A stretch of 20,640 nt of DNA from Piromyces finnis finn (Eukaryota > Fungi > Neocallimastigomycota): NCBI GenBank assembly GCA_002104945.1, contig MCFH01000182.1, positions 1-20,640 of the forward strand, written 5' to 3'. This document shows positions 1 to 20,640 of the stretch, piece by piece (position 1 is the first letter of the stretch; the number at the start of each line of letters is the position of its first letter). Both the position numbers and the translations under genes were made by a program. The notes beneath the pieces are model-generated. The model saw nothing but the letters and a program-made list of their open reading frames with translations. It was not told the origin of the DNA and searched no databases.

Positions 1-763
1 TAATTATTAATTGAATTAATATAGATATTTAAATGATAATTACAATAACTAAGCTTCCCTGGAAGGAGATAAAAATACATTTTAATTTGTATTATCATTT
101 TTTATAAAAGTATTATATATAAAAATTGAAGTATTTAATTAATTGAATAAATTTTATTATATAGATGTTTAGATAATAATTACATTACTGAGCTTCCCAC
201 TATTAAAAGTGAATATATTTTATTAGGTAAACATTTTTCGTCATTATTTTTTCTAAAAACTAATTAAATTTATAAATAGCGAAAATAAATTATTTTATAT
301 TATTATCAATTTTTTCTTTCAAGTTAATTAAACAAATTTATATTTAAAAAATAGTATACAATACAGAGAATATTTTTCGTCTCCTGTCATTACTGGTGAT
401 GAAGTAATACAATTATTAATTAAACTATTAATTATTTTTAAAATATAAAATTTTGTTAAAAAAAAAAGCAAAATAATAAAATTGTTAAATTTAATAGATA
501 CATAAAATAATTTTATAATGATTTAATTAAATAATTACCTAATAAAAAATATATTCACTTTTAATAGTGGGAAGCTCAGTAATGTAATTATTATCTAAAC
601 ATCTATATAATAAATTTATTTCAATTAATTAAATACTTCAATTTTATATATAATACTTTTATAAAAATGATAATACAAATTAAAATGTATTTTTATCTCC
701 TTCCAGGGAAGCTTAGTTATGTAATTATCATTTAAATATCTATATTAATTCAATTAATAATTA
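1..763. repeat. Inverted repeat: 1-230 is the reverse complement of 535-763 (about 305-nt non-palindromic spacer); places inverted copies of two gene D exons on the + strand
   Basis: 1-13 taattattaattg pairs with 751-763 caattaataatta. aagcttccctggaaggag (51-68) and gagcttcccactatt (190-204) recur reverse-complemented at about 696-713 and 563-577. The arms differ only by homopolymer-length indels. Confidence 0.93.
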
Positions 764-3700
764 AATAAATATATATTAATAAATTATTTATATTTTCATT
801 TTATTTAGACTATATTTTTATTATAATCTGTTTTTGATTAAATACAAATGTTGAATATAATTATATATAATTTCAGCTGGAATCTTGGTTATTTTATTAT
901 TGTTTAATTCTCTACATTAATTAAATATATATAAATAAATATATAATTAATAAAATATTTTAATTAATAATTAATTATTTATAATAATACTTTAATAATA
1001 AGTAATATAAATGCTTACAAATATTTAATACCCCCAAACTTAGCAGGAATCTCACTAATTCTATTATCATTGAGTTCTCTATATTAATTAAATTATTATT
1101 TAAATTAATTAATCAAATATTTCAATATATTAATTAAAGATAAATAATAAAATATATACAGTGAATAAAGTTTAGTGAGATTTCCAATCTCAGGAGGAAT
1201 CTCACTAATTCTATTATCATTGAGTTCTCTATATTAATTAAATTATTATTTAAATTAATTAATCAAATATTTCAATATATAATTAAAGATAAATAATAAA
1301 TATATACAGTGAATAAAGTTTAGTGAGATTTTTCAATCTCAGGAGGAATCTTGGTTATTTTATTATTGTTTAATTCTCTACATTAATTAAATGATGATTA
1401 ATTAAATTTATATAAATATCAACTATAATTAATTATACATATAATATTTTATAAATATATATAAATACATACAAATGTTCAATTCTTCCTGTTTTAAAAG
1501 GAAACTCGGTAATTTTATTATCGCTTAATTCTCTATATTAATTAAATTATTATTTACATTTTTTAAAAAAATATAATTAATAGAATATTTTAAATTTTAA
1601 ATCATTGTATATAATACTTTTATTATAAATAATATAAATCTATACAATCTCCAAACATTTCCAAGTTCAGCAGGAATCTCAGTTAAACTATTATTATTTA
1701 AATATCTTTAAAAATATTAATGGATTATTTAAATTATATAAATAAATATATAATTAATAAAATATTTTAAATTATAATTATTATATATAATGATTTTATG
1801 ATAAATACTTACAATGAAAAGCTTTCATTGCAATTTACAATTTCCTTTGAAACTTAGATATCTTGTTATTAGACAATTCTCTATGAAATATTTAAAATAT
1901 TATCATTAAATTATCTCCACTATTATTATAAATTCTTGATTATATAAATAATATAAAGAATAATATACAAAACTCTAATATTAGAAAGCTTTCCAGCTGA
2001 ATCAGGAATTTCGGTAAAATTATTATAATTTAAATTTCTATTTAAGTTAATATTTTATAAATATTTTTTAATATTATTTTTCATAAGATAAAGCATAATA
2101 TTGTTAACATAGAAAAAGAGGAAAAACATACAAATACTCAATTGGAAGATTTACTATTTATCAAAAATCTCAGATAAACTATTATTACTTATATATCTAT
2201 AAAATACAATAAATACAATTATATATATTAATAATTAAGTATTATTTTTACTTTTCAATTATTTAAATTCATACAAATAAGTAAGATTAATCATTCCTTC
2301 GATAGAATCAGGAAGGACAGTTAAATTATTGTTTGACAAATATCTTAGTAAATTAAATAATATGAAAAATATATAAATATTTAATAAAGTATTTTTATGT
2401 ATTATATTATATTATATTATATTATATTATATTATATATATTATATTATATTATATTATATTATATTATATTATATTATATTATATTATATTATATTATT
2501 ATATTATTTTAAAATGTAATGAAAACTTACAAACAATGAAGTTGAGTAAGCTTTCCAATGGTATCAGGAAGAGTTGTTAATTATTTCCGAATAAATCTCT
2601 ATAAGATTATTTTAAATAAAAACTTTAATATTTATTTTAATTATTTTCTAAATCAAGAAAAACATACATTCTTTCAAGTTTTGTAAGATTTCCAATGGAA
2701 TCGGGAAGAGTTGATAAATTATTTTCTATCATCTCTCTAATATTTACAAATATTAAATATTAAATATTAATAATTGATTATAAAAATATTTATTTATTTT
2801 ATAAAGTATTCATCAAATTATATAAAACAAAATTTATACAGAGATGAAAGATTAGAAAAATTTCCAATGGAATCTGGAAGTGTTTCCAAATTATTATAAT
2901 TTAAATACCTATAAAACAATTATCAAAAAAAAAAAAAAGAATAAATTAATACAATTCCAATTCTATTCAATAATAACATAAAATTTTATATTCTCTTTTT
3001 TTTTAAAAAAAAATAAATCATAATTTAATTGTATTTTAAAAATTTATCACTTACAGTTGTTCAAGTTTTGTAAGCTTTCCAATGGTATCAGGAAGAGTTT
3101 TTAAATTATTATAATTTAAATACCTATAAAAGTATTTTAAGAAAAGCATCAATATTAAAAAACTATTATTATTTTAATTATTTTCTAAATAAAAAAACAT
3201 ACAGTAAAGTGAGATTACTAAGGTTTCCAATTGAATCTGGAAGTGTTTCCAAACTATTACTATTTAACTCCTATAAAACAATTTTCAAAAAAAAATGAAT
3301 AAATAAATATTTTAGAATTTTTTAAAAAGAATGAAATTTCAATTCTATTCAATAATAATATAAATTTTTTATATTCTCTTTTTTTTTTAAAAAAAAAATA
3401 AATCATAATTTAATTGTATTTTAAAAATTTAGCACTTACAGTTGTTCAAGATTTGTAAGTTTTCCAATGGTATCAGGAAGAGTTTTTAAATTATTTCCGT
3501 ACAAAATTCTATAAATTTATATAATTATATTAATAATTAAAATCAATATAAATGTTAAAATAATTAATATTTAATATCTTTTTTTTTTTTTTTTTTTTTT
3601 TTTTGGAACACATACAACTCTTTTAGATTAACAAGATTTCCAATTTCAGAGGTAATTTTAGAAAAATCATTACCTCCTAAATTTCTTTTTAATTTATTTT

Positions 3701-4884
3701 TTAATTTTTAAAATTATTAAAACTTTACAATGAAATTTTTTTTTCTCTTATTAATTTTATTATATATGCATTATCATACAATTTTTCAAGATTGGTAAAA
3801 TTTCCAAAAAAACACGGAACCAATTCTAATTTATTATTTTGTATATCTCTTTAATTTTTTAAAAATAGAATTATTATACAATAAAATAATTTATTACTAT
3901 TATTTCTTATATTTTTACTATAAATAATAATAATACATACAAACTCCAAAGTTCAGTCAAATTTCCAAATGAATCTGGGATGGAAGAAATTTCATTACTA
4001 TTTAAATGTCTATTTTGTATTTTTATTTTAAAATAAGAAAATTAATAAAATATAATAATTATGATAATAATCATGTGATAAAAATGCACTTACAAATTCC
4101 ATAAACCTCTTAATTCACCAATTTCATTAGGGATATTTTTTATATTGTTATAGCCTAAATCTCTATTATATTTTTTATATATAATTTAACTATTATTATT
4201 AATGTTTTTATTTAATTTTATATTTAAATATTTAAAAAATAATTACTAACAAATATCTTAGATTAGTGAGTTTTCCTATTTCATTTGGAATATTGTTTAT
4301 ATCATTTTTGTATAAAAGTCTTTTTTTAATTTTTTTATTAAAATGAATATTTATTTACTAAAATTGATTTATAAATACTTTTATTTTATAATTAAAAAAA
4401 AATATACAAACAAATGTTCAAGATTTTTAAGATTTCCTATTTCAACTGGAATTTCAGTCAATTTATTTATAGAAAGATCTCTATATAAATTTATTTAAAT
4501 AAATGAATAAAATATAAAATATATACAGGTGGATAATTTAGGGTGATTCTCTTTAACTTATTTTAACTTTATTTACTTACAATTTTTTTAAGGTTGTTAC
4601 ATTAAAAATAAATTCAGGAATCTCTAATAAGTCCTTTCTAGACATTAATCTTAATATTTTTTTTATTTTTTTAGTACTTTTGATAAACTACCAAGTAGAT
4701 AAGAATAATATATTTATTTCATTATTAATAATATCAATACATACAATTCAATGGCATCTCCATTACTATCCTCTTTACAGTTATTATAATTTTCTACTTT
4801 TAGTTGTTCACAAATTTCTTCGCATGAATATCCAAATGCTATTGTAATCAATAGCAATAAATTCATAATAAATTTTAATATCAT
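365..4884 (-). CDS. Gene D: secreted/surface LRR protein, signal peptide + Cys cap + 26 single-repeat LRR exons (mostly 23-aa repeats); 3' end not identified
   Basis: Hand-spliced, all introns GT-AG. Exon 1 4884-4745 (MILKFIMNLLLLITIAFGYSCEEICEQLKVENYNNCKEDSNGDAIE). LRR exons: 4649-4581, 4480-4412, 4319-4251, 4162-4094, 4009-3941, 3848-3780, 3684-3616, 3508-3440, 3270-3203, 3123-3055, 2908-2840, 2736-2668, 2598-2531, 2343-2275, 2196-2132, 2037-1969, 1880-1813, 1705-1646, 1532-1473, 1377-1308, 1228-1160, 1078-1019, 911-846, 739-677, 602-539, 424-365. Examples: LDLSINKLTEIPVEIGNLKNLEH, LYLNYNNLKTLPDTIGKLTKLEQ. Six exons are 1 nt off frame (68, 68, 65, 68, 70, 64 nt), each explicable by a homopolymer length change, so this is either an intact gene with sequence errors or a young pseudogene. 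Confidence 0.88.
1045..1351. repeat. Near-perfect tandem duplication, period 150/149 nt, flanked by AGGAATCT
   Basis: tgagttctctatattaattaaattattatttaaattaattaatcaaatatttcaatatat occurs at 1071 and 1221. AGGAATCT occurs at 1045-1052, 1195-1202 and 1344-1351. Confidence 0.95.
2401..2507. repeat. (ATATT)n pentanucleotide microsatellite, intronic in gene D
   Basis: Direct reading; about 20 units with small interruptions. Confidence 0.95.
2861..3495. repeat. Diverged direct duplication of an exon-intron-exon segment (about 2861-3110 vs about 3224-3495)
   Basis: Shared blocks: aatctggaagtgtttccaaa, ctataaaacaatt, ttctattcaataataa, aaataaatcataatttaattgtattttaaaaattta, cacttacagttgttcaag, tttccaatggtatcaggaagagtttttaaattatt. 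Confidence 0.9.
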
Positions 4885-7213
4885 TTTTATTAATTATTCT
4901 TTACACCTTTTGGCAAAAGATTAAAAAAAAAAAAGGAAGGAAGAAAGAAGAAGAAAAAGAAAAAGAAAAATTCTTCTTTTATACCTTTTAAATTCGGAGG
5001 TGATTTAAAGAATTTCTTTTAAAAAAATTAATTTAAATAAATTGAATATATTGAAATATATTGTAATATATAATTAAATTTTTTAATTAAATTTTTAATT
5101 CTAATTAAAAAAATTTATTTAAATATAAAAAAATAAATTAAAATATCTAATATATTACAATATACTCTAATATATAATTAAATTTAATATTATTATCTTT
5201 AACAAATAATATTATTTTTAAATAACTAATATTTTTTGTAAAAATAATAATATTTGTAAAAAAAGATTTTAATAAAATATATATTGTTATATTGTTATAT
5301 ATAAATATTATAAATATTGCTATACATTATTAGGAATCCTCTATTTTTAAAGGTTTTTTTTATAAATAATTATTTTAAAAATAATAAATTGAAAATGCTG
5401 ATGAAAGAAAGGCAGATTTATCATTTATTTCCCCAAAAAAAATTCTTTTAAAAGAAATTCTTAATTCGGAAATTTTTTTTAATTAAAAAATTATAATTAA
5501 TTAATTATATTGTAATATATATTACTTTATACTATAATATATGATATTTATTAATTAATTATATGCATGTATAATAATTAGACTTTAATTATTATACTTG
5601 ACTATTTTACATTATAATTTTTTGTATATATATATTTTTGAATATTGAATATTAAATATTTTCTATGATTATTTAATAATAAATAATTTTTAATGAAAAG
5701 AATAACTAATAATTAAGAAAGAGGTATATCAAAGATACTATATAGGATTATGGTTACTTTGATAACAAAGATATTTTTATTATTGATATAATGTAATAAT
5801 AAAATGAATTATAACAAATGATTATAGTGATAATACAAAGAAGGTAAGCCTGGAAAAAAGAATTGGAAAGAAGAAAAAACAAATTAACAATATAGAAACT
5901 AACATAGTAAAGAAAATTTTTATATTATATACAATTTATGCTATTTTATAAATTAGATATATATAATACTTATTATTATAAAATTTATTATTATTAGATG
6001 AGAGTACATACTCATAAAACATCTAAGGCTTATACTTTTGTTATTAAATTTAATATTCTTCTAATAATATAATAACATTAATCTATTTATATATCATATA
6101 AATATAAAAGTTTCATATATAAAAATTATGATTATATAGTCTAGAAATAGTAATACTCAAAAAAGTATATAATAGAAAAATTCACAATATTAATAATAAT
6201 TATATAACTTGATTTATATCATTTATAGGAATGATATAATATAATGAATAGTACACACCTAATATTGGAAAAATTCATAAATGGATTTAATATAAAACTG
6301 AATTATATTATATATAAAATTTAATATATATATTAACTAAAAATCCAATAATCTATTTTAACATCATTTTAATTAATAATATAATTTTATAAATGTTAGT
6401 GTCATGCATTATATAAATAGATAAAAAAAAATAATATCTAATATAAAAAAACCTTTAATCCTTAATAATTTTATTTCAATAATTTTTAATTATTAATATT
6501 TATATTTATTTTATTTGTCCTTTATAGACTCACTAATACATAATACATTAAATAAGTTGTAATTAAAAATGAGATAAAAATTGTTAAATATTTTACATAT
6601 TATTTACAAAATACAGTATTTTTTGGTTAAAAGATTCACGATGTTTGTTATAAACATCGTCTGATTCGTTATATTCAAATTCTGTAATATCAATTGAACA
6701 ACTTTCTCTATTTAATATTTCGTTTGTTAATGAATTTGTATAAACAAATTTAGGGACAGAGTGATCAAAGGAAGAATTTGAAGTGACAGAGTTTTCATCA
6801 ATAGTTATAATGATATAATCTCCATTCTTACTTGTTCCAAAAATACTACCTACACATTCATGTCCAACAAGATAGTTTTTAGCTGGCATTGTAACATCTG
6901 CTGTAATTTTGTAGATTAAATAAATATTAAATTGATTATCATCAATAACTTCAATCTTTCCATTTGAACTTTTACCGAATTTATAACCAGAACATCCTTT
7001 TTGAGTACAGGTATAAATGCCATTCTTACTATTAATATAATAACCTAAATCCCCTTTTTTATTACATTCAAAAATATCATTATTAGTTTCACAATAATAA
7101 AGTAAACCTGGTATAGATTTGTCTTCTTGAAGTAAATGTTTATCTTCATCAACGACCAAGTTATAAGTTTTTTCTTCACAATTTACATCCTTATCTTCAT
7201 TACACTTTAAAAT

Positions 7214-7379
7214 AATATAATATAATATAATATAATATAATATAATATAATATAATATAATATAATATAATATAATATAATATAATATAATATAATATAA
7301 TATAATATAATATAATATAATATAATATAATATAATATAATATAATATAATATAATATAATATAATATAATATAATATA
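7214..7379. repeat. (AATAT)n pentanucleotide microsatellite, about 33 units, intronic in gene E
   Basis: Direct reading. Confidence 0.97.
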
Positions 7380-7767
7380 GCATTAATTAAAAAAAAAAAG
7401 AGAAATCTTTATAATTTTTATTTTTATATACTATCATCTTCAATTGGATCTTCTTTTGGACCTATGATTATTATATTATAATGTTAGATTTCTATTTATA
7501 TTTTAATTTCATTAAAAGATAAATAAACATAAATAATAATAGATTTATACACTTTTTAAGACCGTAATAATTGCATCTTCTACTAATAATTGTATAACAT
7601 AATCCAGTTGTAATTGACAAGTTTTATTTGCAGGATTCAATTCCATATTATCATAAATATTTAAATCAGGTATTTCACCAGTTAAACCAGAATTAACCTT
7701 GACATATCTGTTACAGTCATTTATTTTTAATCTTTTAAAAAATATTATAACATGAAAATAAAATTTC

Positions 7768-7977
<210 letters not shown>

Positions 7978-8405
7978 TAGTATAAACTTATTTTAAAAGA
8001 ATTCTAAATATTTTAGGTCTTCAGTTTCCGAAGGAATTGAATCTGCTAATTTGTTATTACTTAAATCTCTATATTATTAATAATTAAAATTAAAAAATAT
8101 ATAAAAAGCTTGTTTACTGTCTTCTTCTTTCTATGTATTAATAATTTAAAGTAATTCATTAATTCATTTTTACAAAGCTTCTAAATATTTAATATTTTTT
8201 ATATCCGATGGGATCGAGTCAGTTAATTAATAAAAATTTAGAATTCCTATTGAATATCAAATCAAATATAATATATATAATATTTATACATTAATTCCAC
8301 ATATGGCATGGATCCAAATGAATCAGGGAATACAGTATTTTTGACTTTTTCTTTTGTAAATGTACTATCATATATTTTTAATATTTAATATAAATTGTAG
8401 GTTCC

Positions 8406-8438
<33 letters not shown>
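8406..8438. repeat. (AAT)11 microsatellite, intronic in gene E
   Basis: Direct reading. Confidence 0.9.
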
Positions 8439-10298
8439 TTAATAATTATCTATGGTAATATATTAACTACAAACTTTCTAAATATTGTAAATTTTAAATA
8501 CCTTCAGGAAAAGTCAAAGATAATTCATAATTACTGAAATTACTTTTTAAAATAAATAAAGGATTATTCTTTACCAATTAAATTATTAATAAATTTGCAT
8601 TCAACATTAGTCTCTGTATTAATGAATGGATTATTCCTTAAATTTCTATTTTATATAATCAATATATAAATAGATATTTTAAGATATTAATATAACTATA
8701 AAAAAAATAATTTTTATTTTTTAATGTAAATATATATTTACAATTCTATTTTATCTGAGAGATCTTTAAATATTTGAGGAATTTCACCAAATAATTGATT
8801 ATTATTTAATTTTCTATAATATATATTCAATTATAATATTTTTCAAATTAAAAAAAGCCACAAATGAATTTGACTAAAAAATATATAATCAGTTATATAT
8901 ATAAGTTGAAAATATATAGGTATTTATTATTAACAAAAGGCATATAAAAAAGTTTTAAAGTATCTAGAATATTTTTAAATATTTTTTTTATTTAAAACCA
9001 TAAAATAATAAATATTAATTGTTATTTGATGAAGTATAAAAATGATTTCTCAAAAACTAAACTATTTAATATTTATTAATTATATAAAAACTAGAAAATT
9101 TTGTCAACTTTATTGAAGATATATTTTCCTTATTTAGATGATCTGGATAATTTATTTTGTTAAAATTATTACATAAATATTTCATATTCAATAACTTGGT
9201 TTATATTTGGATAGAGAATTAGAAATCATTATTAAAAATATATTTTTTATTACCATTTTAAAATAGATGAGATACAGTTATTAATGTATTAAAGCATTAA
9301 AATAGTTTCATTATATACCATTATGAATAATTTTAAAATTTTTTTGTTTTATGAAAATATATTTTGTATTAAATACCATTTTCTGAATATTTCCAATTTA
9401 AATTACATATCTAAAGGTACTAAGAAGGAACTTAACCACATAATTAATTTGTCCGCCTGATATATAGTAAACATTTTATTTTTTTATTTTTATTTTATTT
9501 TAAAAATATTAAATACCTTTAATTTTTTTCCATATATTCGAAATAAATTTATTTATTAGTTGTAAAGTAATTGAATATTTATATATATAAATATAAATAT
9601 TTCAAATAATATCAAATCAGCATTTCCATATTACTAAAGCATCTTTTTTATATTAAACAAAAGTAGTATATATATATATATAAATATAAAAATAAATAAA
9701 TTCTAAATAAAAGTTATTATTTTCAATAATTTAAGATTAACTTTAAAAAAATACATTTAAATACATGTTAATTTTAAAAAGAAAAAAAAACACTATAAAG
9801 AATAATAAATAATAAATAGCTATTCTTTTTTAATTTTTCAAAATAAATAAAGTAACCAAAAAAGTTATTAAAATTAACCTGGTAAAGATATGGAATATTT
9901 ATTATAAACTTTAATTGAAATTAAACCATTTTTATTATTATAAAATTCCTTTATATATATAATTAAACTATTTAAATCTTATCGCTTTTAAAAAATAGAT
10001 ATTATCCATTTTTATTAATACTATATTATTTAAACATTGGACATTTTATTTAATTATTTAATAATTTTAGGATAAAATAAGTTTATTCCTGTATTAAGAT
10101 ACTTATCTTTCATTATAAATTATTTAATATTCTTTTATAGCATGTCGAAATAATATATATATTTATAATTTATACAATCTTTGAATATTAACATCTTATC
10201 ATAATTTAATTATTAATTTGAAAATAAAAATTTTAATACTTTACATGTTTACATAGCTAAAAAAACTTTTTTTATTTTGGTGAAATTTTTGGTAAATC

Positions 10299-10332
<34 letters not shown>

Positions 10333-10877
10333 TATTTGTGTTGTTACTTTAAAAATAATTAATAAAAAGGTCAAAGGATTTATTATTATTTTTAAAAACC
10401 ATACTATAATCTTTTTATTTATAATAATATTATAAAATATTATATTTAGTTACTACTAAAAACATTACTTTTTTTTAATATTAAAAACAAACAAATTATA
10501 AAGTTTTTTTTTATTCCAAAGTATAATTTGTAACATAATGTATTAAAATAACGTATACAACAAATTTTTTATATAAATTTTCAGTTTAATTAATATTGAA
10601 AAAGTTAAAATTATGATAAATGTAATTCTTTCGCCGATGTAAATTTAAACATATTTATAGATTTGTAAAATAAATAAAAAGGAACATATATGTTAAAATA
10701 ATAACATTTCTTTATAGTCTAACAAAAATTAAAAAGTTTATGTTTTGAGTAATTTTTAAGAATTTATATTTATATAAAATTTTGAAATATTTATTAATTA
10801 AAAGAATGATAGAAATATAAAGTTATAATAAAGATTTCAAATTAAAGAAATTTAAATATTAGATATTTATTGATTTC

Positions 10878-13341
10878 TTAATTTTCATCATTTGAAGAAT
10901 TATTTCTACTTTCTTCTATGGTAAAGTTTCTGTTTTTTGCTTTTAGATATATTAACACCACCACTGTAATAAATAATAGAATACATACTGAAATAATAAT
11001 AATCGTTAAAAGAGGTGACCTTTTATCCTCTTCAGTTTCTAATAACGGATTATTTGATACATTTCTTAATATTTGAATTAAAAACGTAAAATAATATAAT
11101 TAATAATTTAACATCATAATAAAAAGAAATTTATATTAAAGTATATTTAAATTTATATTTTGATAGAGTAAAACTTATTTACAATTTTATATCCTTTTTT
11201 TTTAATTCTTTTGGAATGGAACCACTTAAATTATTATCATTTAAGAGTCTATTTTGTTTTTCATATTAAAATAATATTAACAATAAAATAAAAATTGTAA
11301 ATATATTATATTATATTTTGTTAACTTGTTCAATAAATAATAAAAACTTTTAATTACAAAGATTTTAAATTAGATAAATTTCCTAGCTCAGATGGAATAG
11401 ATCCTGATAATTTATTAAAAGATAAATCTCTATATTATACAAAAATAAGATATTATGCAAAAAAATATGTTATATTTTTTATTATTAATTATCATTATTA
11501 TTGTTGTTGTTGTTATTTTTATTTTAATTACAATTTTTCCATATTAGTTAGCTTTCCAAGTTCAGGAGGAATAGAATCTACCAGAAAGTTATCGGATAAA
11601 TCTCTATCATATTAAATTATACATTTAATATTAAATATAATAGTAAATATGTAATAATATTCATTTATTAAAATAAAGTATGTTAACATTCAGCAATTAC
11701 AATGTTTTTAAATTAGACAAATTTCCGAGTTCAGAAGGTATAGAACCAATTAAATCATTTATATTAAGTTCTCTATTTTAAATAAAATAATAATTATGTA
11801 TATTACATAATAAGTAAATATTTAATTTTAAATAATAATGTTTTAAAATTTTTTAAATATATACAAATTCTTTAATTTTGATAATTTTCCAAATTCCCGA
11901 GGTATATGTCCAGATAAATAGTTATATGAAAAATCACTTTTTTATATTTAATAAAATATTAAGTATCAATCAATAAATGTATAGTATTTAATATACTAAT
12001 TAATATATTACATCAACTATAAATATAAATATTAAACCCATTTATTATTACATTCTTTCCAGATTTGATAAATTTCCAAGTTCGGATGGTATTTTACCAT
12101 CTATTAAATTTTGATCTATAACTCTTTTCAAATGAAAGTTATGGGAAATAATAAATTATTATTTAATAGTATTTAATTGATTGATATTTAATTATTATTT
12201 TTAATTAATTACAATGTTTTTAAATTTGATAATTTTCCAAGTGAAGAAGGAATTGAACCTGTTATATTATTTCTAGTAATATACCTTTTTTTTTTTCGTA
12301 TAAAGTATATAATAAATTAATGCCTTTTTCATAAACATGTAACATAAAATGATATCTAAATAGTTACATTTCTTTCAAATTTGTTAAATTTCCAAGTTCA
12401 GATGGCAAAGTACCATTTATACTTTTTCCATGCAAATATCTTTAATGAATTAAAAGTAAATTCAAAATTTAATAAACATAACAATAATAATTAATATAAG
12501 AAATTTTAATAAATACAGTACATATATTCTAATTTTGATAAGTTTCCAAGTTCAGGTGGTATGGTACTAGATAATTTATCTCCATATATATATCTATTGA
12601 AATGTACAAAATATGTTATTATAAATATAAAAACATATTTGATGATTAATAAAATAATATAATTAGGTAAAAAAGCATTTACAAATATTCTAGATTTGTT
12701 AAGTTTCCGAGCTCAGATGGTATAGAACCTTTTAAATTTTTTCCACTTATACTCCTGTTTCCAAATAAAAATATATATAAATATAAAATCATTTTTTAAT
12801 AGATATAATATTTATTATGTATTATAAAGCATTACAAATATGTTAGATATGTTAAATTTCCAAATTCAGGTGGTATGGATCTATTTAAACAGTAAAAATA
12901 TATTTGAATATTTTATTAATAAATATTATAAAATCTTGAATATATAATGATCATTTATATAAAAGTAATATTAGTAATATTAAAAAAAAAAAAAAAAAAA
13001 CGTATTACTTTTCATTTGTAATATCTTCAACTTCATCAGAATTTGAATAACCAAAATTAAAATTTCTTTTATTTAATAAAAATTGTTATTAATACTACTA
13101 ATAAAAAATATTTACAATTATAAATATCTAATAATGAAATAAATATTTTAATATTAATTCATTACATTCTAATTATATGACCATCATCTGAACATATAAT
13201 ATTCTTGTGTATACAACAATCAAATGATAGATCTATATTTAATAATTTATTTACTATTTCACATTCTTTATTAATATCTTTTTCAGCAAGTATAAATTTT
13301 ATTATAAAAATGAAATTAATCAATAAAATAAATATATTCAT
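10878..13341 (-). CDS. Gene A: intact LRR receptor-like protein (signal peptide, Cys cap, about 11 LRRs, single TM, short cytoplasmic tail), 392 aa, 14 exons
   Basis: Exons 13341-13166 (176 nt), 13065-13009 (57), 12880-12836 (45), then nine of 72 nt (12754-12683, 12593-12522, 12439-12368, 12284-12213, 12123-12052, 11936-11865, 11772-11701, 11603-11532, 11429-11358), 11248-11183 (66) and 11064-10878 (187). Sum is 1179 nt, open to TAA, all introns GT-AG and phase 2. Repeat e.g. LDLSFNKLSGSIPSELGNLSNLKS; TM LLTIIIISVCILLFITVVVLIYL followed by KAKNR; many NLS/NLT glycosylation sequons. Confidence 0.93.
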
Positions 13342-14572
13342 TATCAAAAATATTTTTATACTATTTAAAAATAATAAAATGAAAGGTATAATAAAAAAAA
13401 ATCCTACTAAATCTATTATTTTTTAAAAATACTTTAATAACTTTTATAGGACTATTAATAAAAATTAAAAATAAAATTTTCCATCCGTGTATGGAATAAG
13501 GTTCAATGATAAATTGTAATTATTTATGTTTTTAAGAAAAGTATTAATTTTCTTTTTAATGAACTTTAAATTATTTAATTTTATTTTGAATTATGTTAGC
13601 TCTGTTTAATTGTACTATTTTTCTATTATTTAAACTATTTGAAATTATCATTTCTCCCGATAGCATATGGCTAACAATACAAAATACTATAGAAATACGC
13701 TCTATATAGAATTAATAAGAATTAATGAATAATTTTCCTATTTCTAATAATTAAAGATACATAATTCTATATGGACTATTATAAAAAATATAACATTTAA
13801 TTATTAGCTATTTTTGATGTTTCCTACATTTATATACATTATTTAATATTTTAATACAATAATTACTTATATAATGAACTATAATTTTTATTATTTTATA
13901 TTTCATATCTACTAATTATTAGAATGACTCAATTTAATAATTAAAGCCCATTAAATAAGAATAAATATATTATATTTATTGTTTTTAATCAGCATAGATT
14001 AAAAGGTTCAGTTCCTTTACATAATATGTAAATTGACATATTTAATTATGTTTTAATAAAAGTTTTATACTAATTTTCTATGCTATTTTAAATTATAATT
14101 TTAATATATCCTTTTTTTCTCAAGTATCATTTAAAAAAAAAACAAATAATTCATCTTAAATATTGCTATAAAAATTAGTTATTTAAAATATATTCTCTCT
14201 TTATTTAAGCTTTACATAATTATTGTTATTTATTTTATTGAGCTTTTCTATTAGAATTGGACTATTACAGAAACAATTTATTAAAAATAATGTTTTCGTT
14301 CGTTGTGTTAATTAGAATGTCAGATAATGGCATGCACTCATAGAGATTATATAATGTATAGATAGGGTGAAATGTATTAAAATTGGTAATCTTGTTGTGT
14401 TTTATTTATATTTCCATTAATTTTTATAAATATACAATTATTACATGAAATAATTTTTGTTTATCTTATTATATTATATATATATATATATCAAATAAAA
14501 TTAAACAGTATGACAATTTTAGTTAATATTTTTATACACTAAATTGAAAATAAAATGAATTATTTGAATTTA

Positions 14573-14603
<31 letters not shown>

Positions 14604-16541
14604 TATGATTTGTTATTTTGTCAACTTTTGATATTGAAGTACCCTTATAAAATAATATTTTATTATATTATTAAATTATCATTAAATAACAATATTATTA
14701 TTATTATTATTATTATTAAATTCTTTTTAAATATATTTTCTTTTATGTTTGAATGAGGTTTTTTCGATTGTGTAAATATTTGAAACGATATTAGCCCTTT
14801 CAAGTGATTAAAAAATAGGAGGTGTATTTGAAAAAGAATTATTATTTATTCGTATTTACCAAAGTAACATATCCTAATCCTAATTTATAGGAGAAAATCT
14901 CAAGTGTAAAACCAGAAAATAAAACATGGTAAATTAGTTTTTATCATGATTTAGACATTAATTTAGTTTACATTGGAGATTAAATTATATTTTTATCTGG
15001 GTGAAATGTTTAATACTTTCATAATTAAACTTTCATATACAAAAACAAATAAATTTTTAGAATAGAAGAAAAAAGAAAATTACTTTCTTAACAAAGAACT
15101 TTTAATATTTTCTAAAAATAATAATATTTTTATAATATTTATTTGTATTTGCTTTTACTTAATAAACAACTATTATTAATAGAAAGCTGAAATAATGACA
15201 TGGCTTCAATTAAATATGTAATATAAACAGTTTATAAAAATTAAAAAAAAAAACCTCAACATTTCATTATTAAATTTTATTTTTAACAAAGAAATTATAT
15301 ATTAATTTTTAAAAAAAAATAAATAATAGAGATAAAGAAATAAACATTGTAAGTAATAGTATTTAAAGTATTTAAATAAAATTTTATTTATTATTGACTG
15401 TGATATTTTTTAAATTATATTATATCTACATATTGACATAATTTAAAAAATACGAATTATTAGATATAAACAATATATTTAATAAACTTGTTTTTATATA
15501 AGTATATAAGTAGAGAATTAGAAATTATTAATTAAAGATATTAACTTATTTAAATGCTTTAGATTTTAAATTTTTTGATTAGTTATTTTTTTGTATATTT
15601 CAATTAAGATTTTGGAAAGAATATATTAGAACCTGAAAGTTATCGTATATTAAAGATTTAAAATTTAAATGACTAAGTTGTAAACTTTATTTAAGATATA
15701 ATAGTTTCTTGAGTCTTGAATGTTATATCATTGTTCTAGTACATAAAAAAAATTAAAATTGTTTATATGTTGGTTTATTCATACTAACAATAAATAAACA
15801 ATTCAAATATGGATTCTAGTCAGTCCTAAAAAATAATTTATATCTTATATTATTAATATTATTTTTTCCTCTAAATTATATATAATATATATGATATATA
15901 CATCATGTTAAGTTTATATCTTAATTTATTAATAAATTTTCAATAAATATAATTTCCTACATTTTTAATCCAATTAAAGTTAATAAGAGTATAAAATTTT
16001 TATTTTATTTTTTTGTTGTTGGAATTATTACATTTTTTGTGGAAGATGTTATTAAATTTCCCTTTTTTTTTTTATGAAATTAACTTGTGTGGAATTCAAA
16101 TTAATTAATATATTAATGATATAATTGGTATTTAATAAAAGTGGAATCAATTTATTATTTCTTTAATAATAATACTAATTTATTCAATTTTTATTTTTTT
16201 TATTTCAATTATAAGTTTATATTTATTATAGAAAATATATTAATATTAATAGTTTCTTGTTGATCATATATTATATACTAATTAAGAAAAAGTAAGTATT
16301 CTCAAAATTTAATAAATACTCCATATAAGAAAAGAAAGAAAGGAGTGTTAATTTTAAATTTATTGATTTGATTTATTTTATTTATTAATATATAATATTT
16401 ACTTTAATTTATAGTTTATTGAAAGTTCTATTTTAAAATAAAATAAATAAAAATTATTTTATTTATATTTTATTCATTTAAATTATTAATAATAATTGAT
16501 AACATATTTAAAAAGATGTATATTTGTAGATCTATTTGCTT

Positions 16542-19079
16542 TCATGAACAATTAGATACTTTAACATTTTTTAGAGTATTGCCAATTGTACTAGTTTTAT
16601 TTCCATTATCATAGATTTTCCTTTTAGTTTTTAGATATATTAATAATATTACTATAGCAAGAACTAAAATACATATAATTGCAATAATTATATATGAAAT
16701 TGATGAATCATTATCTTCAGTTTCTAATAACGGATTATTTGATATGTTTCTTAATTTATAAATTTAAGTTAATACATGTAATTATTAATTTAAAAAATGA
16801 TAAAATATATATTAATAGATTAATAGTATAGTTTATTTACAATTTTATTTCCATTTTTTTTAATTTTTTTGGAATTGAACCACTTAAGTTATTTTCTGCT
16901 AAATTTCTATAAATTATACAAAGTAAAAAAAAGTTATATGTTACTTATAACATTTTATTTCATATTATTTTAATTAAAAAAAATTTAATTACAAAGATTT
17001 TAAATTTGATAAATTCCCAAGTTCAGGTGGAATAGATCCTGATAATTCATTATGAGCCAAGAATCTTTCAATTATAAAAACAAATTATTAAATATAGAAA
17101 TTATTATTATTATTATTATTATTTTAACTACAGTTTTCTAATTTAGATAGTTTTCCTAGTTCTGGTGGAATAGAATCTACTAAATAATTACTACTTAAAT
17201 CCCTAAAAGTTAAAATTTAATAATAAAGAAATTATTAATAATTATAATTATTTAAAAAATTATAGAAATATATGACAATTAAAATTACAAGGTTTTTAAA
17301 TTAGATAGGTTTCCAAGTTCAGGAGGTATAGGACCAATTAAATCATTTAAATCAAGATCTCTGTTTTAAATAAAATTAAATTTGCATGAAATAATATTAA
17401 AATAAGAATTATTATATAAATAATGTTATTTTAATTTATTCTTTTTTTTAATACTTACAAATTTTTAATTTAGATAATTTTCCTAGTTCTGGTGGTATTT
17501 GACCAGATAACGTATTATTGGAAAAGTCTCTATTTTACATGTCATTTGAAATATTAATAAAAGTAAAAAATTTATTAATAATTAACATATTATTAATTAA
17601 TTACTATTAATATTTATTTAAAAATCTTATTAATTAATAAAAAAGCGAAAGTATTACATTCTTTTAATTTTGATAAATTTCCAAGTTCAGGTGGTATTTC
17701 ACCACTAATAGAATTTTGATCTATTACTCTTTTCAATTAATAATACGTAAATGGTGGAATTATTAAACTATTATTAAATAGTTTTTAATTAATTACTATT
17801 TATAAATATTTTTTATTACAATGTTTTTAAATTCGATAATTTTCCAAAATGAAGAAGGAATTGGTCCTGTTAAATAATTTCTTGAAAAATACCTATTATA
17901 AATAGAATTATAGATAAATTAATAATAGAATATAATAATACTTAATACTTTTTTTTCATTTTTCTTTAATAAATATTTAATTAATAAACATTACATTTCT
18001 TGCATATTTGATAAATTTCCAAGTTCAGATGGTATAGTACCATTAATATATTTTCCATGCAAATATCTATTATTAAAATTAAAAAATAATTAAAATCATA
18101 GGGATTATTACAAATATAATAAATGTGATAAACATAATTACATTTTATTAATATAAATAATTTAATAACATGTACATATAAAATAATTTTTTTAAATTCC
18201 CAATTTCAGGTGTATAGAAGTAACCAATTTATCTCCATATATATATCTTTTTAAAAATTAAAGTATTTATTGTAATTTTAAAGTTAATATAAAAAATAGA
18301 TATAAATAATAATGTAATAATCAAATAGAAAATTTTAAAACAATTACAAATATTCTAAATTTGTTAAATTTCCAAGTTCAGGTGGTATAGAACCTCTTAA
18401 GTTTTCTCCTTTTATACTCCTATTTTCGAATAAAAATATAAATATTATATATTATAAATATAAAATTGAATTATATTTTATTATATATTATATATTATAT
18501 ATTATTTATTATAAATTTTACAAGTATGTTAAGTTTGTTAAATTCCCAAGTTCAGATGGTATGCATCTATTTTAATCATTTAAAAAATATAAAATCTTAA
18601 TATAATAATAAATTATATATATAATAATATTAATATAGAAATAATTAATTAATTACTACCTATATTTATCATTTGTAATATCATCTTCTCCATCAGTATA
18701 TTTAATATCTAAGTTTCTTTTATTAACATGAATAATAAAGATGAATAAAGAATATTAAAATTAAAAAATATAAATCACATCACTTTATAAATTTTAAATA
18801 TTGTTGAATATTAAGATTGGATATTTAACCGATTAAAAATATGCTTTAATATTTTTTAAAAAAATATCATAATTAACAAAATATTAAAATTTTGATTTAT
18901 TACATCCTCGTAATATGACCATCATTTGAACATAAAATATCTCCATGTGTACAACAATCAAATGATGGATCTTTGTTTAATAATTTGTTTACTCCTTCAC
19001 ATTCCTTATTAACATTGGTTTGTGCATAAATGAATTTTACTATTAAAATGAAATTAATTAAAAAAATAGGTATATCCAT
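16542..19079 (-). CDS. Gene B: paralog of gene A, same 14-exon LRR receptor-like architecture; five 1-nt indels (sequence error or pseudogene)
   Basis: Exons 19079-18904 (176), 18716-18660 (57), 18566-18522 (45), 18419-18348 (72), 18246-18176 (71), 18066-17995 (72), 17892-17820 (73), 17728-17658 (71), 17529-17459 (71), 17360-17289 (72), 17202-17132 (71), 17064-16993 (72), 16906-16841 (66), 16749-16542 (208; LNISNNPLLETEDNDSSISYIIIAIICILVLAIVILLIYLKTKRK...VKVSNCS*). Exon-for-exon similarity to gene A. Confidence 0.85.
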
Positions 19080-20075
19080 TTTCAATGAATATTTTTATTA
19101 TTTAAAAAAAATAATATTTTTTTTTTTTTTTGTTAAGTAAATATATATATTGATATATTTTTTGAATTTATAAAAAAAATCTAGTTAAGTTTAATAATTT
19201 AAACTATTTTTAAGACCTTTAAAATAATTTTTATCCATATTTTATAATTCTGTTTTAATAAAATAATTAAAAAAATATAATAAATTTAAATAATCATATA
19301 TTATAAATTATGAAAGTAGGTTAAATTTTGACTATTTATTTTTATTAGCAAATACATAAATATTTAACTACTTATTCATTTCCAAATATAATATATCATA
19401 AAATGGTATATTATAAAATATCATAAATAAGCCTTTAAAATAAATCTTAATTTTAAATAAAATAAATTAATATATTTAAAAATTGTTATATAATTCAATA
19501 ATAAATATTATAACCTATCAAAAATAGATATTTCTTTTTTAAAATATATCATATATATACATATCTAGTGTAAGTTAATTTTTAATAAAATCTTTTTAAG
19601 AAATAAATTAAGCAATTTAAGTTTTGAAAAATAAAAACTTTAATTCATGGAGATTATTTACTTTCTTGAGCAATTAGATAGTATAGTTTTCAATAGTTCG
19701 ATTACAATATAGGATTAATAAATAAAAATAATAAAAATCAATATGATTGCTTTTCTTTTAGTAAATAAGTACAAAGCAAAAATAATTAAAAATATTAAAA
19801 AAAAAGGATTAAAATACATTTTTTATTAAAATTTTAATTTTTTTTAAATTATTGAATAAAAATATATAATAAAATGTTATATACAAAGTATTAAATTTAA
19901 TATCAATTGTAAATCATTATTACTTAATAATTAATAACTTTAAATTATAATTATTTTATTAAATCATATTATAATTAATATAAAAAAGTATACTTTCATT
20001 TAATAAGAATCATTATAATTAATACTATTAATCAATATCTATGTTCATTAGCAATAACCATTTAGTATTTTCCAA

Positions 20076-20620
20076 TTAGCAATTAGACAGAATGTACATT
20101 TTGGTTATTAGATATTGAATTACTTTTTCTATTTCCCATAAATTTTCTTTTTAGTTTTTAAATATATTAATACTATTACTATAATAAGTATTATGATGCA
20201 TATTGCTATTATAATAATAGTTACAAGTGATGAATCATTATCTCCAGTATTTAAATAATGGGTTATTTGATACATTTCTTAATATTTAAATTTAAAGTTA
20301 TAAATAAAAAATTATTATTATTTAATATGCTTATATATTTTTTCCTAAAATATATTTATATTTTATATTAATAATAAAGATTAATTACAATTTTATATCC
20401 ATTTTCTTTAATTTTTTTGGAAATTGAACCACTTAAATTATTGTCTGCTTAAATATTTCTATTATTTATAACCAAAAAAAAAAAAATTATAAAAATATCA
20501 AATATTATAGGTTACATTTTATTTATACTATAAATATATCTTTATTACAAAGATTTAAATTAGTTAGATCTCCAAGTTCAGGTGGAAATAGACCCTGTTT
20601 AATTTTTTATTTTTATAATT
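20076..20620 (-). CDS. Gene C: 3' end (last three exons) of a third A/B paralog, running off the window edge; many 1-nt indels
   Basis: Exon ~20620-20549 (…GSIPPELGDLTNLKS, acceptor not visible), exon 20458-20389 (…ADNNLSGSIPKKLKKMDIK; 70 nt vs 66 expected), and terminal exon 20277-20076 (LNVSNNPLL…DNDSSLVTIIIIAICIIILIIVIVLIYLKTKKK…SNC*) after correcting extra bases in T/G runs. Confidence 0.8.
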
Positions 20621-20640
20621 TTTTAAAAAGTAATTTTTAT

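What the first reader, a model, noticed from the sequence alone, without database searches (positions are those of the whole stretch)
365..20620. Cluster of LRR genes built from freely interchangeable one-repeat exons: a candidate variable receptor repertoire in a probable gut fungus
Seen: about 55 LRR exons in five same-strand genes are each cut at the same place, after base 2 of the codon for the hydrophobic residue preceding xLxxNxL. Nearly all LRR exons end in TT, CT or AT and start with A, G or T, so any joining gives Leu/Ile/Met/Phe and keeps the frame. Skipping, duplicating or swapping an exon therefore adds or removes exactly one well-formed repeat. Known: repeat-per-exon LRR genes exist in the plant ERECTA family, Ectocarpus ROCO/LRR candidate immune receptors and Tetrahymena LRR families; extracellular LRR receptor arrays are not a standard feature of Dikarya fungi. 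Inference: this is a rapidly diversifying non-self or ligand recognition system using exon shuffling and possibly alternative splicing.
Basis: partly seen in the sequence, partly recalled or inferred. Interest (0 to 1): 0.88.

Follow-up and report, generated by a model that had tools for sequence, protein, structure and literature searches.

The report
One-repeat-per-exon LRR genes, gut fungus
A gene cluster of the gut fungus Piromyces finnis really does encode surface leucine-rich-repeat proteins with one repeat per small exon, cut exactly as in plant receptor genes, but the evidence points to ordinary evolution by tandem duplication, not to a shuffling or splicing repertoire.

Summary
I count 54 LRR exons on the minus strand, nearly all 69 or 72 nt. 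Every intron splits the Leu/Ile codon before xLxxNxL after its second base.

The window is the whole contig MCFH01000182.1 of Piromyces finnis. It is a poorly polished, redundant copy (99.5%) of a locus on MCFH01000049.1. My first reading, that genes A and D are pseudogenes, was wrong. Seven tested frameshifts are window-only homopolymer errors.

- Gene A is a secreted protein with 25 LRRs, a Thr-rich stalk and two chitin-binding modules. The window loses that tail to a fold-back.
- Genes C, D and E are plant-type receptor-like proteins: signal peptide, Cys cap, LRRs, membrane helix, short tail.
- Gene B is decayed LRR exons plus an orphan ORF.

Repeat number does change by whole units: a perfect 148-nt exon-plus-intron duplication, and neighbouring paralogues with 6 versus 9 LRR exons. 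But exon order stays colinear, dN/dS is below 1, and RNA word shares fit full exon inclusion. Rice LRR-kinase genes have the same 72-nt, phase-2 cut.

The scan has noted the same architecture on many other pieces of this genome.

The parts
231..4884 (-). Gene A: secreted LRR protein. It has a signal-peptide exon, 25 one-LRR exons (A2-A26), a 60-nt cap exon (A27) and the first 29 nt of the last exon. The rest of the last exon (Cys module, Thr-rich stalk, two Chitin_bind_1 modules) is missing from the window.
   Evidence: Exons: 4884-4745, 4649-4581, 4480-4412, 4319-4251, 4162-4094, 4009-3941, 3848-3780, 3684-3616, 3508-3440, 3270-3203, 3123-3055, 2908-2840, 2736-2668, 2598-2531, 2343-2275, 2196-2132, 2037-1969, 1880-1813, 1705-1646, 1532-1473, 1377-1308, 1228-1160, 1078-1019, 911-846, 739-677, 602-539, 424-365, 259-231. 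On MCFH01000049.1 (L002) the same 28 exons give an open 899-aa frame. The NCBI model there has 893 aa. The tail scores 58.3 bits against Chitin_bind_1, cut-off 27.8.
1..230 (.). Fold-back at the contig end: an inverted copy of window 543-772 (exons A25-A26 and their intron).
   Evidence: Inverted-repeat arms are 97-100% complementary. In L002 and L003 the sequence continues colinearly past this point, and window 230-1 matches L002 17139-16910 in reverse at 98.3%. Most likely an assembly artefact.
1034..1399 (-). Recent tandem duplication of one exon-plus-intron period (148 nt; about 150 nt in the window because of indel errors). It covers A21, A22 and A23.
   Evidence: TRF finds period 150, 2.4 copies, 91% matches. 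On L002, 16341-16477 equals 16489-16625 exactly (137 nt; 156 nt with one mismatch). The two intron copies are 79/79 identical, and the break points lie inside the exons at the Ile-Pro codons.
2840..3508 (-). Older duplication of a two-exon cassette (A9-A10 and A11-A12, period about 385-390 nt), introns included.
   Evidence: A9/A11 are 84% identical and A10/A12 78%. The introns A9-10 and A11-12 match at 135 of 147 aligned bases, against 41 of 69 for an unrelated intron pair. Direct repeats D7 and D9 are 84% identical.
7997..8813 (-). Gene B, upstream part: five decayed LRR exons and one cap-like exon.
   Evidence: Exons: b1 8813-8742 (72 nt, open), b2 8645-8575 (71 nt, resembles the start of exon C14), b3 8542-8471 (in-frame TAA), b4 8364-8290 (75 nt), b5 8246-8174 (73 nt, stops), b6 8068-7997 (donor lost). 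This stretch lies in the clean middle of the contig and is the same in all three assembly copies, so the defects are real.
6597..7730 (-). Gene B, downstream part: an orphan Cys-rich ORF, NCBI hypothetical protein BCR36DRAFT_415269 (P0275, 235 aa).
   Evidence: The 202-aa exon 7204-6599 is 100% identical to P0275, which was the only match in that search. It has no Pfam family, no atlas neighbour above 0.59, and an AlphaFold2 pLDDT of 32.
10878..13341 (-). Gene C: intact plant-type LRR receptor-like protein, 392 aa. It has a signal peptide, a 4-Cys cap, an acidic spacer, a half repeat, ten LRR exons (nine of 72 nt, one of 66 nt), a membrane helix and a tail of about 20 aa.
   Evidence: Exons: 13341-13166, 13065-13009, 12880-12836, 12754-12683, 12593-12522, 12439-12368, 12284-12213, 12123-12052, 11936-11865, 11772-11701, 11603-11532, 11429-11358, 11248-11183, 11064-10878. 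The NCBI model has the same range and 392 aa. RNA run X2 holds 0.29 of the sampled words, against 0.31 expected if all exons and no introns are present.
16542..19079 (-). Gene D: paralogue of C with the same 14 exons in the same order.
   Evidence: Exons: 19079-18904, 18716-18660, 18566-18522, 18419-18348, 18246-18176, 18066-17995, 17892-17820, 17728-17658, 17529-17459, 17360-17289, 17202-17132, 17064-16993, 16906-16841, 16749-16542. Exon-by-exon identity to C is 72-89% and always highest on the diagonal. D9 and D11 read 71 nt in the window but 72 nt in L002 and L003. D5 (71), D7 (73) and D8 (71) lie in the error-rich end and could not be checked. The NCBI model P0001 passes the LRR_1 and LRR_8 cut-offs.
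20130..20620 (-). Gene E: 3' part of a third C-type paralogue (last two LRR exons and the membrane-helix exon), cut by the contig end.
   Evidence: It is 76% identical to the D and C tails. The frame is broken at least four times in the last 600 nt of the contig. That region is where window-only indel errors pile up, so its status is unresolved.

Best explanation
This is a tandem cluster of cell-surface leucine-rich-repeat proteins of Piromyces finnis that evolves in the germ line by birth and death.

There are two kinds of protein:
- Genes C, D and E encode type-I membrane receptor-like proteins with plant-type 24-residue repeats and only a short cytoplasmic tail.
- Gene A encodes a secreted protein with 25 repeats of 23 residues. 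It is held on the fungal wall by a Thr-rich stalk and two chitin-binding modules.

Each repeat sits on its own 69- or 72-nt exon flanked by phase-2 introns. The arrays grew by repeated tandem duplication of one exon-plus-intron period. In-register unequal crossing-over or replication slippage between neighbouring periods adds or removes whole repeats. The frame survives because the exonic part of a period is a multiple of three, wherever the break falls.

Shown here: the exon structure, the domain make-up, a recent one-period duplication, whole-exon differences between paralogues, colinear exon order, and purifying selection.

Inferred: the exons are spliced constitutively, and the proteins bind ligands or partners at the cell surface (adhesion or sensing of plant material, bacteria or methanogens). 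The membrane forms would signal through partners, or in some relatives through a MATH-domain tail.
For: - Exon and intron regularity.
- Agreement with NCBI model lengths for gene C (392 aa) and gene A (893 against 899 aa).
- LRR_1 and LRR_8 cut-offs are passed by the NCBI model of gene D.
- The tail of gene A on the main contig matches Chitin_bind_1.
- A perfect 137-nt duplication with a 148-nt period has its break points inside exons.
- An older two-exon cassette duplication has alignable introns.
- The paralogue on another contig (P0170) has the same 176-nt first exon, 72-nt phase-2 exons and 66-nt penultimate exon, but 6 LRR exons against 9 in its neighbour. The matches are colinear: G1-F1, G2-F2, G4-F6, G5-F8, G6-F9.
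- C and D match one to one.
- dN/dS is 0.17 for scaffold positions, 0.40 for other positions and 0.55 for concave-face positions.
- RNA word share for gene C is 0.29 against 0.31 expected.
- Rice LRR-kinase introns split the first Leu of xxLxLxx in phase 2 and give 72-nt exons (PMC3050792).
- An intron-less transcript contig of a relative encodes cap, 8 LRRs, a membrane helix and a MATH_2 domain.
Against: - No reads could be laid on the locus. Splice junctions and isoforms rest on gene models and word shares only.
- No ligand, localisation or expression data exist for these genes.
- The selection test uses only 11 exon pairs.
- D5, D7, D8 and all of E could not be checked against a second assembly copy, so one or both genes could truly be broken.
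- The signal peptide and membrane helix were judged by eye, not by a predictor.
Confidence: 0.72

Rival explanations
1. The symmetric exons serve as a diversity generator: exon skipping, duplication and swapping, partly at the transcript level, give a variable receptor repertoire for non-self recognition.
For: - All LRR exons are phase 2-2, and any junction restores Leu, Ile, Met or Phe.
- Repeat number differs between paralogues by whole exons.
- There is a very recent one-unit gain.
- The family is large and arrayed in tandem.
- Comparable claims exist for Ectocarpus ROCO genes (PMC3341825) and Tetrahymena 90-bp exon genes (PMC6564038).
Against: - Exon order is colinear in every comparison.
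- The dated duplication broke inside exons, so it did not need the symmetric borders.
- dN/dS is below 1.
- RNA word share fits all exons being present.
- An earlier follow-up on a 45-repeat gene of this genome reported constitutive splicing and conserved repeat number (not tested here).
- Plant genes with the same architecture are not splice-diversified (PMC3050792).
Confidence: 0.1
2. Origin by transfer. The C/D/E type descends from a plant LRR receptor gene taken up with its introns by an ancestor of the plant-degrading gut fungi, and later expanded. This concerns origin and is compatible with the best explanation.
For: - The nearest atlas clusters by features are all Streptophyta LRR receptor-like proteins or kinases, score 0.93.
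- Exon length (72 nt), phase and cut residue are the same as in rice LRR-kinases.
- The cap carries a CC...C...GH(I/V) motif. Its weak profile matches fall on the N-caps of plant phytosulfokine receptor 1 and RXEG1.
Against: - The cap matches are not significant (E 0.06-0.27), and Pfam LRRNT_2 was not found.
- Many bacterial proteins share the same repeat consensus at 45-58% identity.
- Gene A, which is not of the plant type, has the same cut place. The site may therefore be an old or convergent property of LRR exon arrays; Tetrahymena arrays are also phase 2.
- No tree was made.
Confidence: 0.13
3. The cluster is a graveyard of pseudogenes: genes A, D and E carry many frameshifts and stops.
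For: In the window as read, 11 internal exons of A and D are out of frame, and E is broken several times.
Against: - Seven of the frameshifts tested (A10, A14, A16, A18, A21, D9, D11), and the false stop in A26, are absent from both other assembly copies.
- 124 of 130 differing columns are single-base homopolymer indels. 79 of the 130 are unique to the window and concentrated at its ends.
- Gene A is an open 899-aa frame on the main contig.
- dN/dS between C and D is well below 1.
- Only gene B's defects are shared by all copies.
Confidence: 0.04

Closest known systems
Plant LRR receptor-like kinase and receptor-like protein genes with one LRR per exon (rice LRR-kinases with complex structures, PMC3050792; ERECTA and SERK types from general knowledge)
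   Same: - The 24-residue plant-type consensus LxxLxLxxNxLSGxIPxxLGxLxxL.
- 72-nt exons, with 66- and 45-nt exons at the ends of the array.
- Introns in phase 2 that split the first Leu of xxLxLxx.
- The layout signal peptide, Cys cap, LRRs, single membrane helix.
- Growth by exon and tandem gene duplication.
   Different: - No kinase domain; the tail is only 20-45 residues.
- The cap is not recognised as LRRNT_2.
- The host is a fungus, a kingdom reported to have almost no LRR receptors (PMC2939053).
- Some relatives carry a MATH domain instead of a kinase.
Tetrahymena 90-bp-exon LRR genes (PMC6564038)
   Same: - Tandem arrays of equal-length exons separated almost only by phase-2 introns, with a junction residue shared by two exons.
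- Thousands of copies in tandem clusters.
- Growth by clonal expansion through unequal crossing-over.
   Different: - Exons are 90 nt (30 residues), not 69 or 72 nt.
- Ciliate-specific.
- That paper states such arrays were not known from other organisms.
Ectocarpus ROCO LRR candidate immune receptors (PMC3341825; brown-algal follow-up PMC11378527)
   Same: One 72-nt exon per LRR, length-symmetric exons, birth-and-death families with pseudogenes, and non-coding LRR relics near genes (compare gene B).
   Different: - The exon is cut at another place in the repeat (it starts at GxxP).
- The proteins are intracellular ROCO GTPases.
- Shuffled exon order and positive selection were reported there but were not found here.
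Chitin-anchored LRR proteins of the same genome
   Same: Secreted, one 23-residue LRR per 69-nt exon, and C-terminal Chitin_bind_1 modules.
   Different: Gene A has 25 LRRs and two chitin modules, against 9 or 12 LRRs and four modules in that note. That note's details were not re-tested here.

Membership tests
Leucine-rich repeat superfamily (Pfam LRR_1, LRR_8) | A match to the Pfam LRR models above their curated cut-offs | tested here: met
   P0001, the NCBI model built from gene D exons, scores 39.6 bits on LRR_1 (cut-off 20.6) and 29.0 on LRR_8 (cut-off 27). The relatives P0026 and P0035 score far higher.
Plant-specific (PS) class of LRR | A 24-residue unit with the consensus LxxLxLxxNxL(S/T)GxIPxxLGxLxxL | tested here: met
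   Exons C4-C12 and D4-D12 read, for example, DLSFNKLSGSIPSELGNLSNLKS plus the split Leu. The nearest atlas clusters are all Streptophyta LRR proteins, score 0.93. Gene A does not belong: it has a 23-residue unit xLxxNxLxxLPxxIGxLxxLxx.
Plant LRR receptor-like kinases | A cytoplasmic protein kinase domain | tested here: not met
   The last exons of C and D encode a membrane helix plus only 20-45 residues, with no kinase match.
Plant LRR receptor-like kinases | Phase-2 introns splitting the first Leu of xxLxLxx, with 72-nt one-repeat exons | tested here: met
   This holds for all LRR introns of C, D, F and G. The plant rule is taken from PMC3050792.
Plant LRR receptor-like proteins and kinases | An LRRNT_2 (PF08263) N-terminal cap | tested here: inconclusive
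   Pfam finds no match for the cap exon.
Exon-shuffled LRR receptor families (Ectocarpus type) | One repeat per symmetric exon, and repeat number varying between paralogues | tested here: met
Exon-shuffled LRR receptor families (Ectocarpus type) | Exon order rearranged between paralogues, and positive selection on exposed residues | tested here: not met
   Best matches are colinear for C/D and F/G. dN/dS on concave-face positions is 0.55 (small sample).
Splice-diversified LRR receptors | Several in-frame exon-skipping isoforms per gene | not testable with these tools
Only word shares of RNA runs are available.
Chitin_bind_1 (CBM18) wall-binding proteins | Hevein-like 8-Cys modules above the Pfam cut-off | tested here: met
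   L002:17573-18238 has two stretches scoring 58.3 bits, cut-off 27.8. This tail of gene A lies outside the window, because the contig folds back at position 231.

The most novel reading that the evidence does not exclude
The gut-fungus LRR arrays are a true surface recognition system of plant-like receptors in a fungus. Repeat number would be polymorphic between isolates through frequent one-period gains and losses, and symmetric exons would be skipped in a share of transcripts. A population, or a single thallus, would then display many binding surfaces. Some members would signal through MATH-domain tails. None of this is excluded, because no reads could be laid and no second isolate was compared.
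Probability: 0.1. Interest if true: 0.8.

Novelty: new member of a known kind. Interest (0 to 1): 0.42.

Why it matters
A 101-genome survey found LRR receptors almost absent from fungi: only five LRR-plus-membrane-helix proteins in four species (PMC2939053). Later work mentions only a few in chytrids and zygomycetes (PMC13618815).

Anaerobic gut fungi instead carry large tandem arrays of such proteins. I found no paper describing them in four literature searches.

Their gene structure is the same, to the base, as that of plant LRR receptor genes. That makes the age or transfer of this exon unit a testable question.

Two readily testable protein types come out of this locus: a chitin-anchored wall LRR protein, and kinase-less membrane LRR proteins. 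Both are candidates for attachment to, or sensing of, plant fibre, bacteria or methanogen partners in the rumen.

A practical lesson: small redundant contigs of this assembly carry about one indel per 220 bases at their ends and a fold-back. Apparent pseudogenes there should not be trusted.

Tried and rejected
- **Pseudogene reading for A, D and E.** Rejected after the three-way comparison with MCFH01000049.1 and MCFH01000166.1.
- **Homologue searches with P0035 and P0001.** Both were flooded by generic plant-type LRR proteins from bacteria, plants and metagenomes. They returned neither gene C's own protein nor transcript-derived fragments, so no cDNA contig could be fetched for C or A.
- **Cap-exon profile search.** It returned mostly 55-83-aa exon-1 ORFs. 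These are useful only to show the conserved intron site.
- **Pfam on the cap, the tail and exon A1.** Nothing significant.
- **Cap profile against solved structures.** Only chance-level matches.
- **Orphan ORF P0275.** No homologue, no atlas neighbour, and an unusable AlphaFold2 model with pLDDT 32, so no fold search was run.
- **tRNA and Rfam scans of the window.** Empty.
- **Spliced proteins.** I did not type them into any tool. Gene C and gene A proteins were therefore not scanned directly against Pfam and not folded.
- **Upstream part of MCFH01000049.1.** It could not be fetched, so D5, D7, D8 and E remain unchecked.


Full report
**What the window is**

The window has 12-19% G+C. It is the complete contig MCFH01000182.1 (20,640 nt) of assembly GCA_002104945.1. 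A protein encoded on it is named 'L domain-like protein [Piromyces finnis]' by NCBI and UniRef.

The contig is not a unique locus. Window 17,618-231 is 99.5% identical to part of the 421-kb contig MCFH01000049.1 (locus L002) and to the 22-kb contig MCFH01000166.1 (L003).

In a three-way alignment, 124 of 130 differing columns are single-base indels in homopolymers. 79 of the 130 are unique to the window. They pile up in its first 4 kb and after 16 kb, while 5-13 kb is clean.

Window 1-230 is an inverted copy of 543-772, whereas both other contigs run on colinearly. The contig therefore ends in a fold-back, most likely an assembly artefact.

**The observation**

All genes lie on the minus strand. 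A search for open AG...GT segments with an LRR motif, followed by hand curation, gave 54 LRR exons:
- 25 in gene A
- 11 each in genes C and D
- 2 in gene E
- 5 decayed ones in gene B

All 52 introns of A, C and D (67-187 nt, median 95) lie after the second base of a codon. In LRR exons that codon is the Leu, Ile, Met or Phe that precedes xLxxNxL.

Exons start with A (40), G (8) or T (2). They end in TT (32), CT (8) or AT (7), with three exceptions. Exons have 24.5% G+C and introns 10.2%.

The NCBI model of gene C has the same range and the same 392 residues as mine. The NCBI model of gene A on the main contig has 893 residues, which equals my 899-residue model started at its second Met.

**A correction to my own first reading**

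As read in the window, 11 internal exons of A and D have lengths that break the frame, and E is broken several times. I first took A, D and E for pseudogenes.

The other two assembly copies agree with each other against the window at A10, A14, A16, A18, A21, D9 and D11. There these exons are 66, 69 or 72 nt and open. The copies also agree against the false stop in A26. On L002 gene A is one open frame of 899 codons.

D5, D7, D8 and E lie beyond the stretch I could fetch, in the error-rich end. They are probably errors too, but that is inference.

Only gene B's stops, frameshift and lost donor are shared by all three copies and lie in the clean part.

**What the genes encode**

*Gene A.* A signal peptide, 25 repeats of 20-23 residues (xLxxNxLxxLPxxIGxLxxL), and a 60-nt cap exon. 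On the main contig there is also a last exon with a small Cys module, a Thr/Ser-rich stretch of about 130 residues, and two Chitin_bind_1 modules (58.3 bits, cut-off 27.8).

*Genes C and D.* A signal peptide, a cap with four invariant Cys, an acidic 57-nt exon, a 45-nt half repeat, nine 72-nt exons and one 66-nt exon of plant-type repeats, a membrane helix and a short tail. Signal peptide and helix were judged by eye. The NCBI model made of D exons passes the LRR_1 and LRR_8 cut-offs. The nearest clusters in the protein atlas are all Streptophyta LRR receptor-like proteins or kinases.

*A relative.* P0026, recovered as an intron-less 1,344-nt contig from a JGI sample and hence a transcript, has the same cap and eight LRRs, followed by a membrane helix and a MATH_2 domain.

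*Gene B.* Decayed LRR exons followed by an orphan Cys-rich ORF with no family, no homologue and no usable model.

**How repeat number changes**

1. On L002, positions 16341-16477 are repeated exactly 148 nt downstream. The repeat is 156 nt long with one mismatch. The two intron copies are 79/79 identical. The break points lie inside exons A21, A22 and A23, at the Ile-Pro codons. TRF sees the same array in the window at 1034-1399. One in-register unequal exchange or slippage event therefore added exactly one repeat. It did not use the intron borders. The frame is kept because the exonic part of a period is a multiple of three.
2. Exons A9-A10 and A11-A12 form an older duplicated two-exon cassette whose introns still align, 135 of 147 bases.
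3. On contig MCFH01000003.1, the paralogue P0170 (gene G) has the same 176-nt first exon, five 72-nt exons, a 66-nt exon and a last exon, all in phase 2. Its upstream neighbour F has nine LRR exons. The best matches are colinear: G1-F1, G2-F2, G4-F6, G5-F8 (90%) and G6-F9 (89%). G therefore lacks whole exons relative to F.

**What speaks against a shuffling or splicing repertoire**

- C and D match exon for exon. Each of the ten LRR exons has its best match on the diagonal, 72-89% against 56-78% elsewhere, and no comparison shows a change of order.
- Over 11 orthologous exon pairs, dN/dS is 0.17 at scaffold positions, 0.40 at other positions and 0.55 at the five concave-face positions. That is the usual LRR pattern under purifying selection, though the sample is small.
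- RNA runs of the organism hold 0.29 (X2), 0.22 (X3) and 0.13 (X4) of the sampled 31-letter words of the gene C stretch. The expected share is 0.31 if every exon and no intron is present.
- For gene A the runs hold 0.16-0.18, against 0.24 expected, and the window's own errors lower that expectation.
- These shares show that the exons are transcribed and the introns removed. They cannot exclude minor skipped isoforms.

**Comparison with what is known**

- Rice LRR-kinase genes with complex structures have mostly 72-nt one-repeat exons. Their phase-2 introns 'split the first Leu ... of the xxLxLxx motif' (PMC3050792). This is the same length, phase and residue as here.
- The short exon-1 ORFs found with the cap profile nearly all end ...GH(I/V)xxM and then stop, because the exon ends AT|GTAA. 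The first intron site is thus shared by more than 25 divergent family members.
- Tetrahymena has tens of thousands of 90-bp LRR exons with more than 96% phase-2 introns, explained by clonal expansion and unequal crossing-over (PMC6564038).
- Ectocarpus ROCO genes have 72-nt LRR exons cut at another place, with shuffled order and positive selection (PMC3341825).
- A 101-genome survey found LRR receptors almost absent from fungi (PMC2939053). Later work mentions a few in chytrids and zygomycetes (PMC13618815).
- I found no paper describing the gut-fungus arrays. One Pecoramyces study lists a gene annotated 'LRR receptor-like serine' among the ten most down-regulated in methanogen co-culture (PMC6414434).

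**Verdict**

The units are modular and are gained and lost one at a time. But the evidence fits ordinary germ-line birth-and-death evolution of a surface LRR family whose gene structure matches that of plant receptor genes. It does not fit free exon exchange.

Transcript-level diversity remains untested. An origin from plants is possible but unproven: the cap homology is inconclusive, and bacterial proteins share the repeat consensus.

The scan has already noted the same architecture on many other pieces of this genome, including arrays of 5, 6 and 13 genes. This window adds the recent 148-nt duplication, the exon-level comparisons, and a warning about redundant contigs.

Noticed in passing
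window 1-230 versus 543-772: The contig end folds back on itself (98-100% inverted copy of exons A25-A26). The two other assembly copies continue colinearly. The fold-back cuts off gene A's chitin-binding tail and, together with an extra T, creates a false stop in A26.
   Followed up: yes
window 1-4000 and 16000-20640: Window-only single-base homopolymer indels occur at up to 19 per kb at the contig ends and almost never in the middle (60 missing bases, 13 extra). Small redundant contigs of this assembly mimic pseudogenes.
   Followed up: yes
window 6597-7730 (minus strand): An orphan Cys-rich ORF (NCBI BCR36DRAFT_415269, 235 aa) with no Pfam family, no homologue among 5.8 billion clustered proteins, and an unusable structure prediction. 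It sits directly downstream of decayed LRR exons.
   Followed up: partly
L005 (JGI sample 3300018087, 1344-nt contig): A transcript of a family member encodes signal peptide, Cys cap, eight plant-type LRRs, a membrane helix and a MATH_2 (TRAF-like) domain. This LRR-receptor layout may give the family a signalling arm.
   Followed up: partly
window 2400-2511, 7208-7379, 7768-7975: Long pure microsatellites sit inside introns: (TATTA)23, (TAATA)34 and (TAT)70. The 7-kb tract differs in length between the three assembly copies.
   Followed up: no
window 13400-16500 and 8900-10850: These are long AT-rich spacers with no convincing ORF, tRNA or Rfam match. The NCBI models nevertheless stretch gene B's start to 9474 and, on the main contig, the C-like model about 1.9 kb upstream.
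   Followed up: no
L004 6852-11792 (MCFH01000003.1): A second tandem pair of C-type genes (F with 9 LRR exons, G with 6) has the same exon lengths and phases. The 348-nt first intron of G is long enough to hide lost spacer exons.
   Followed up: partly
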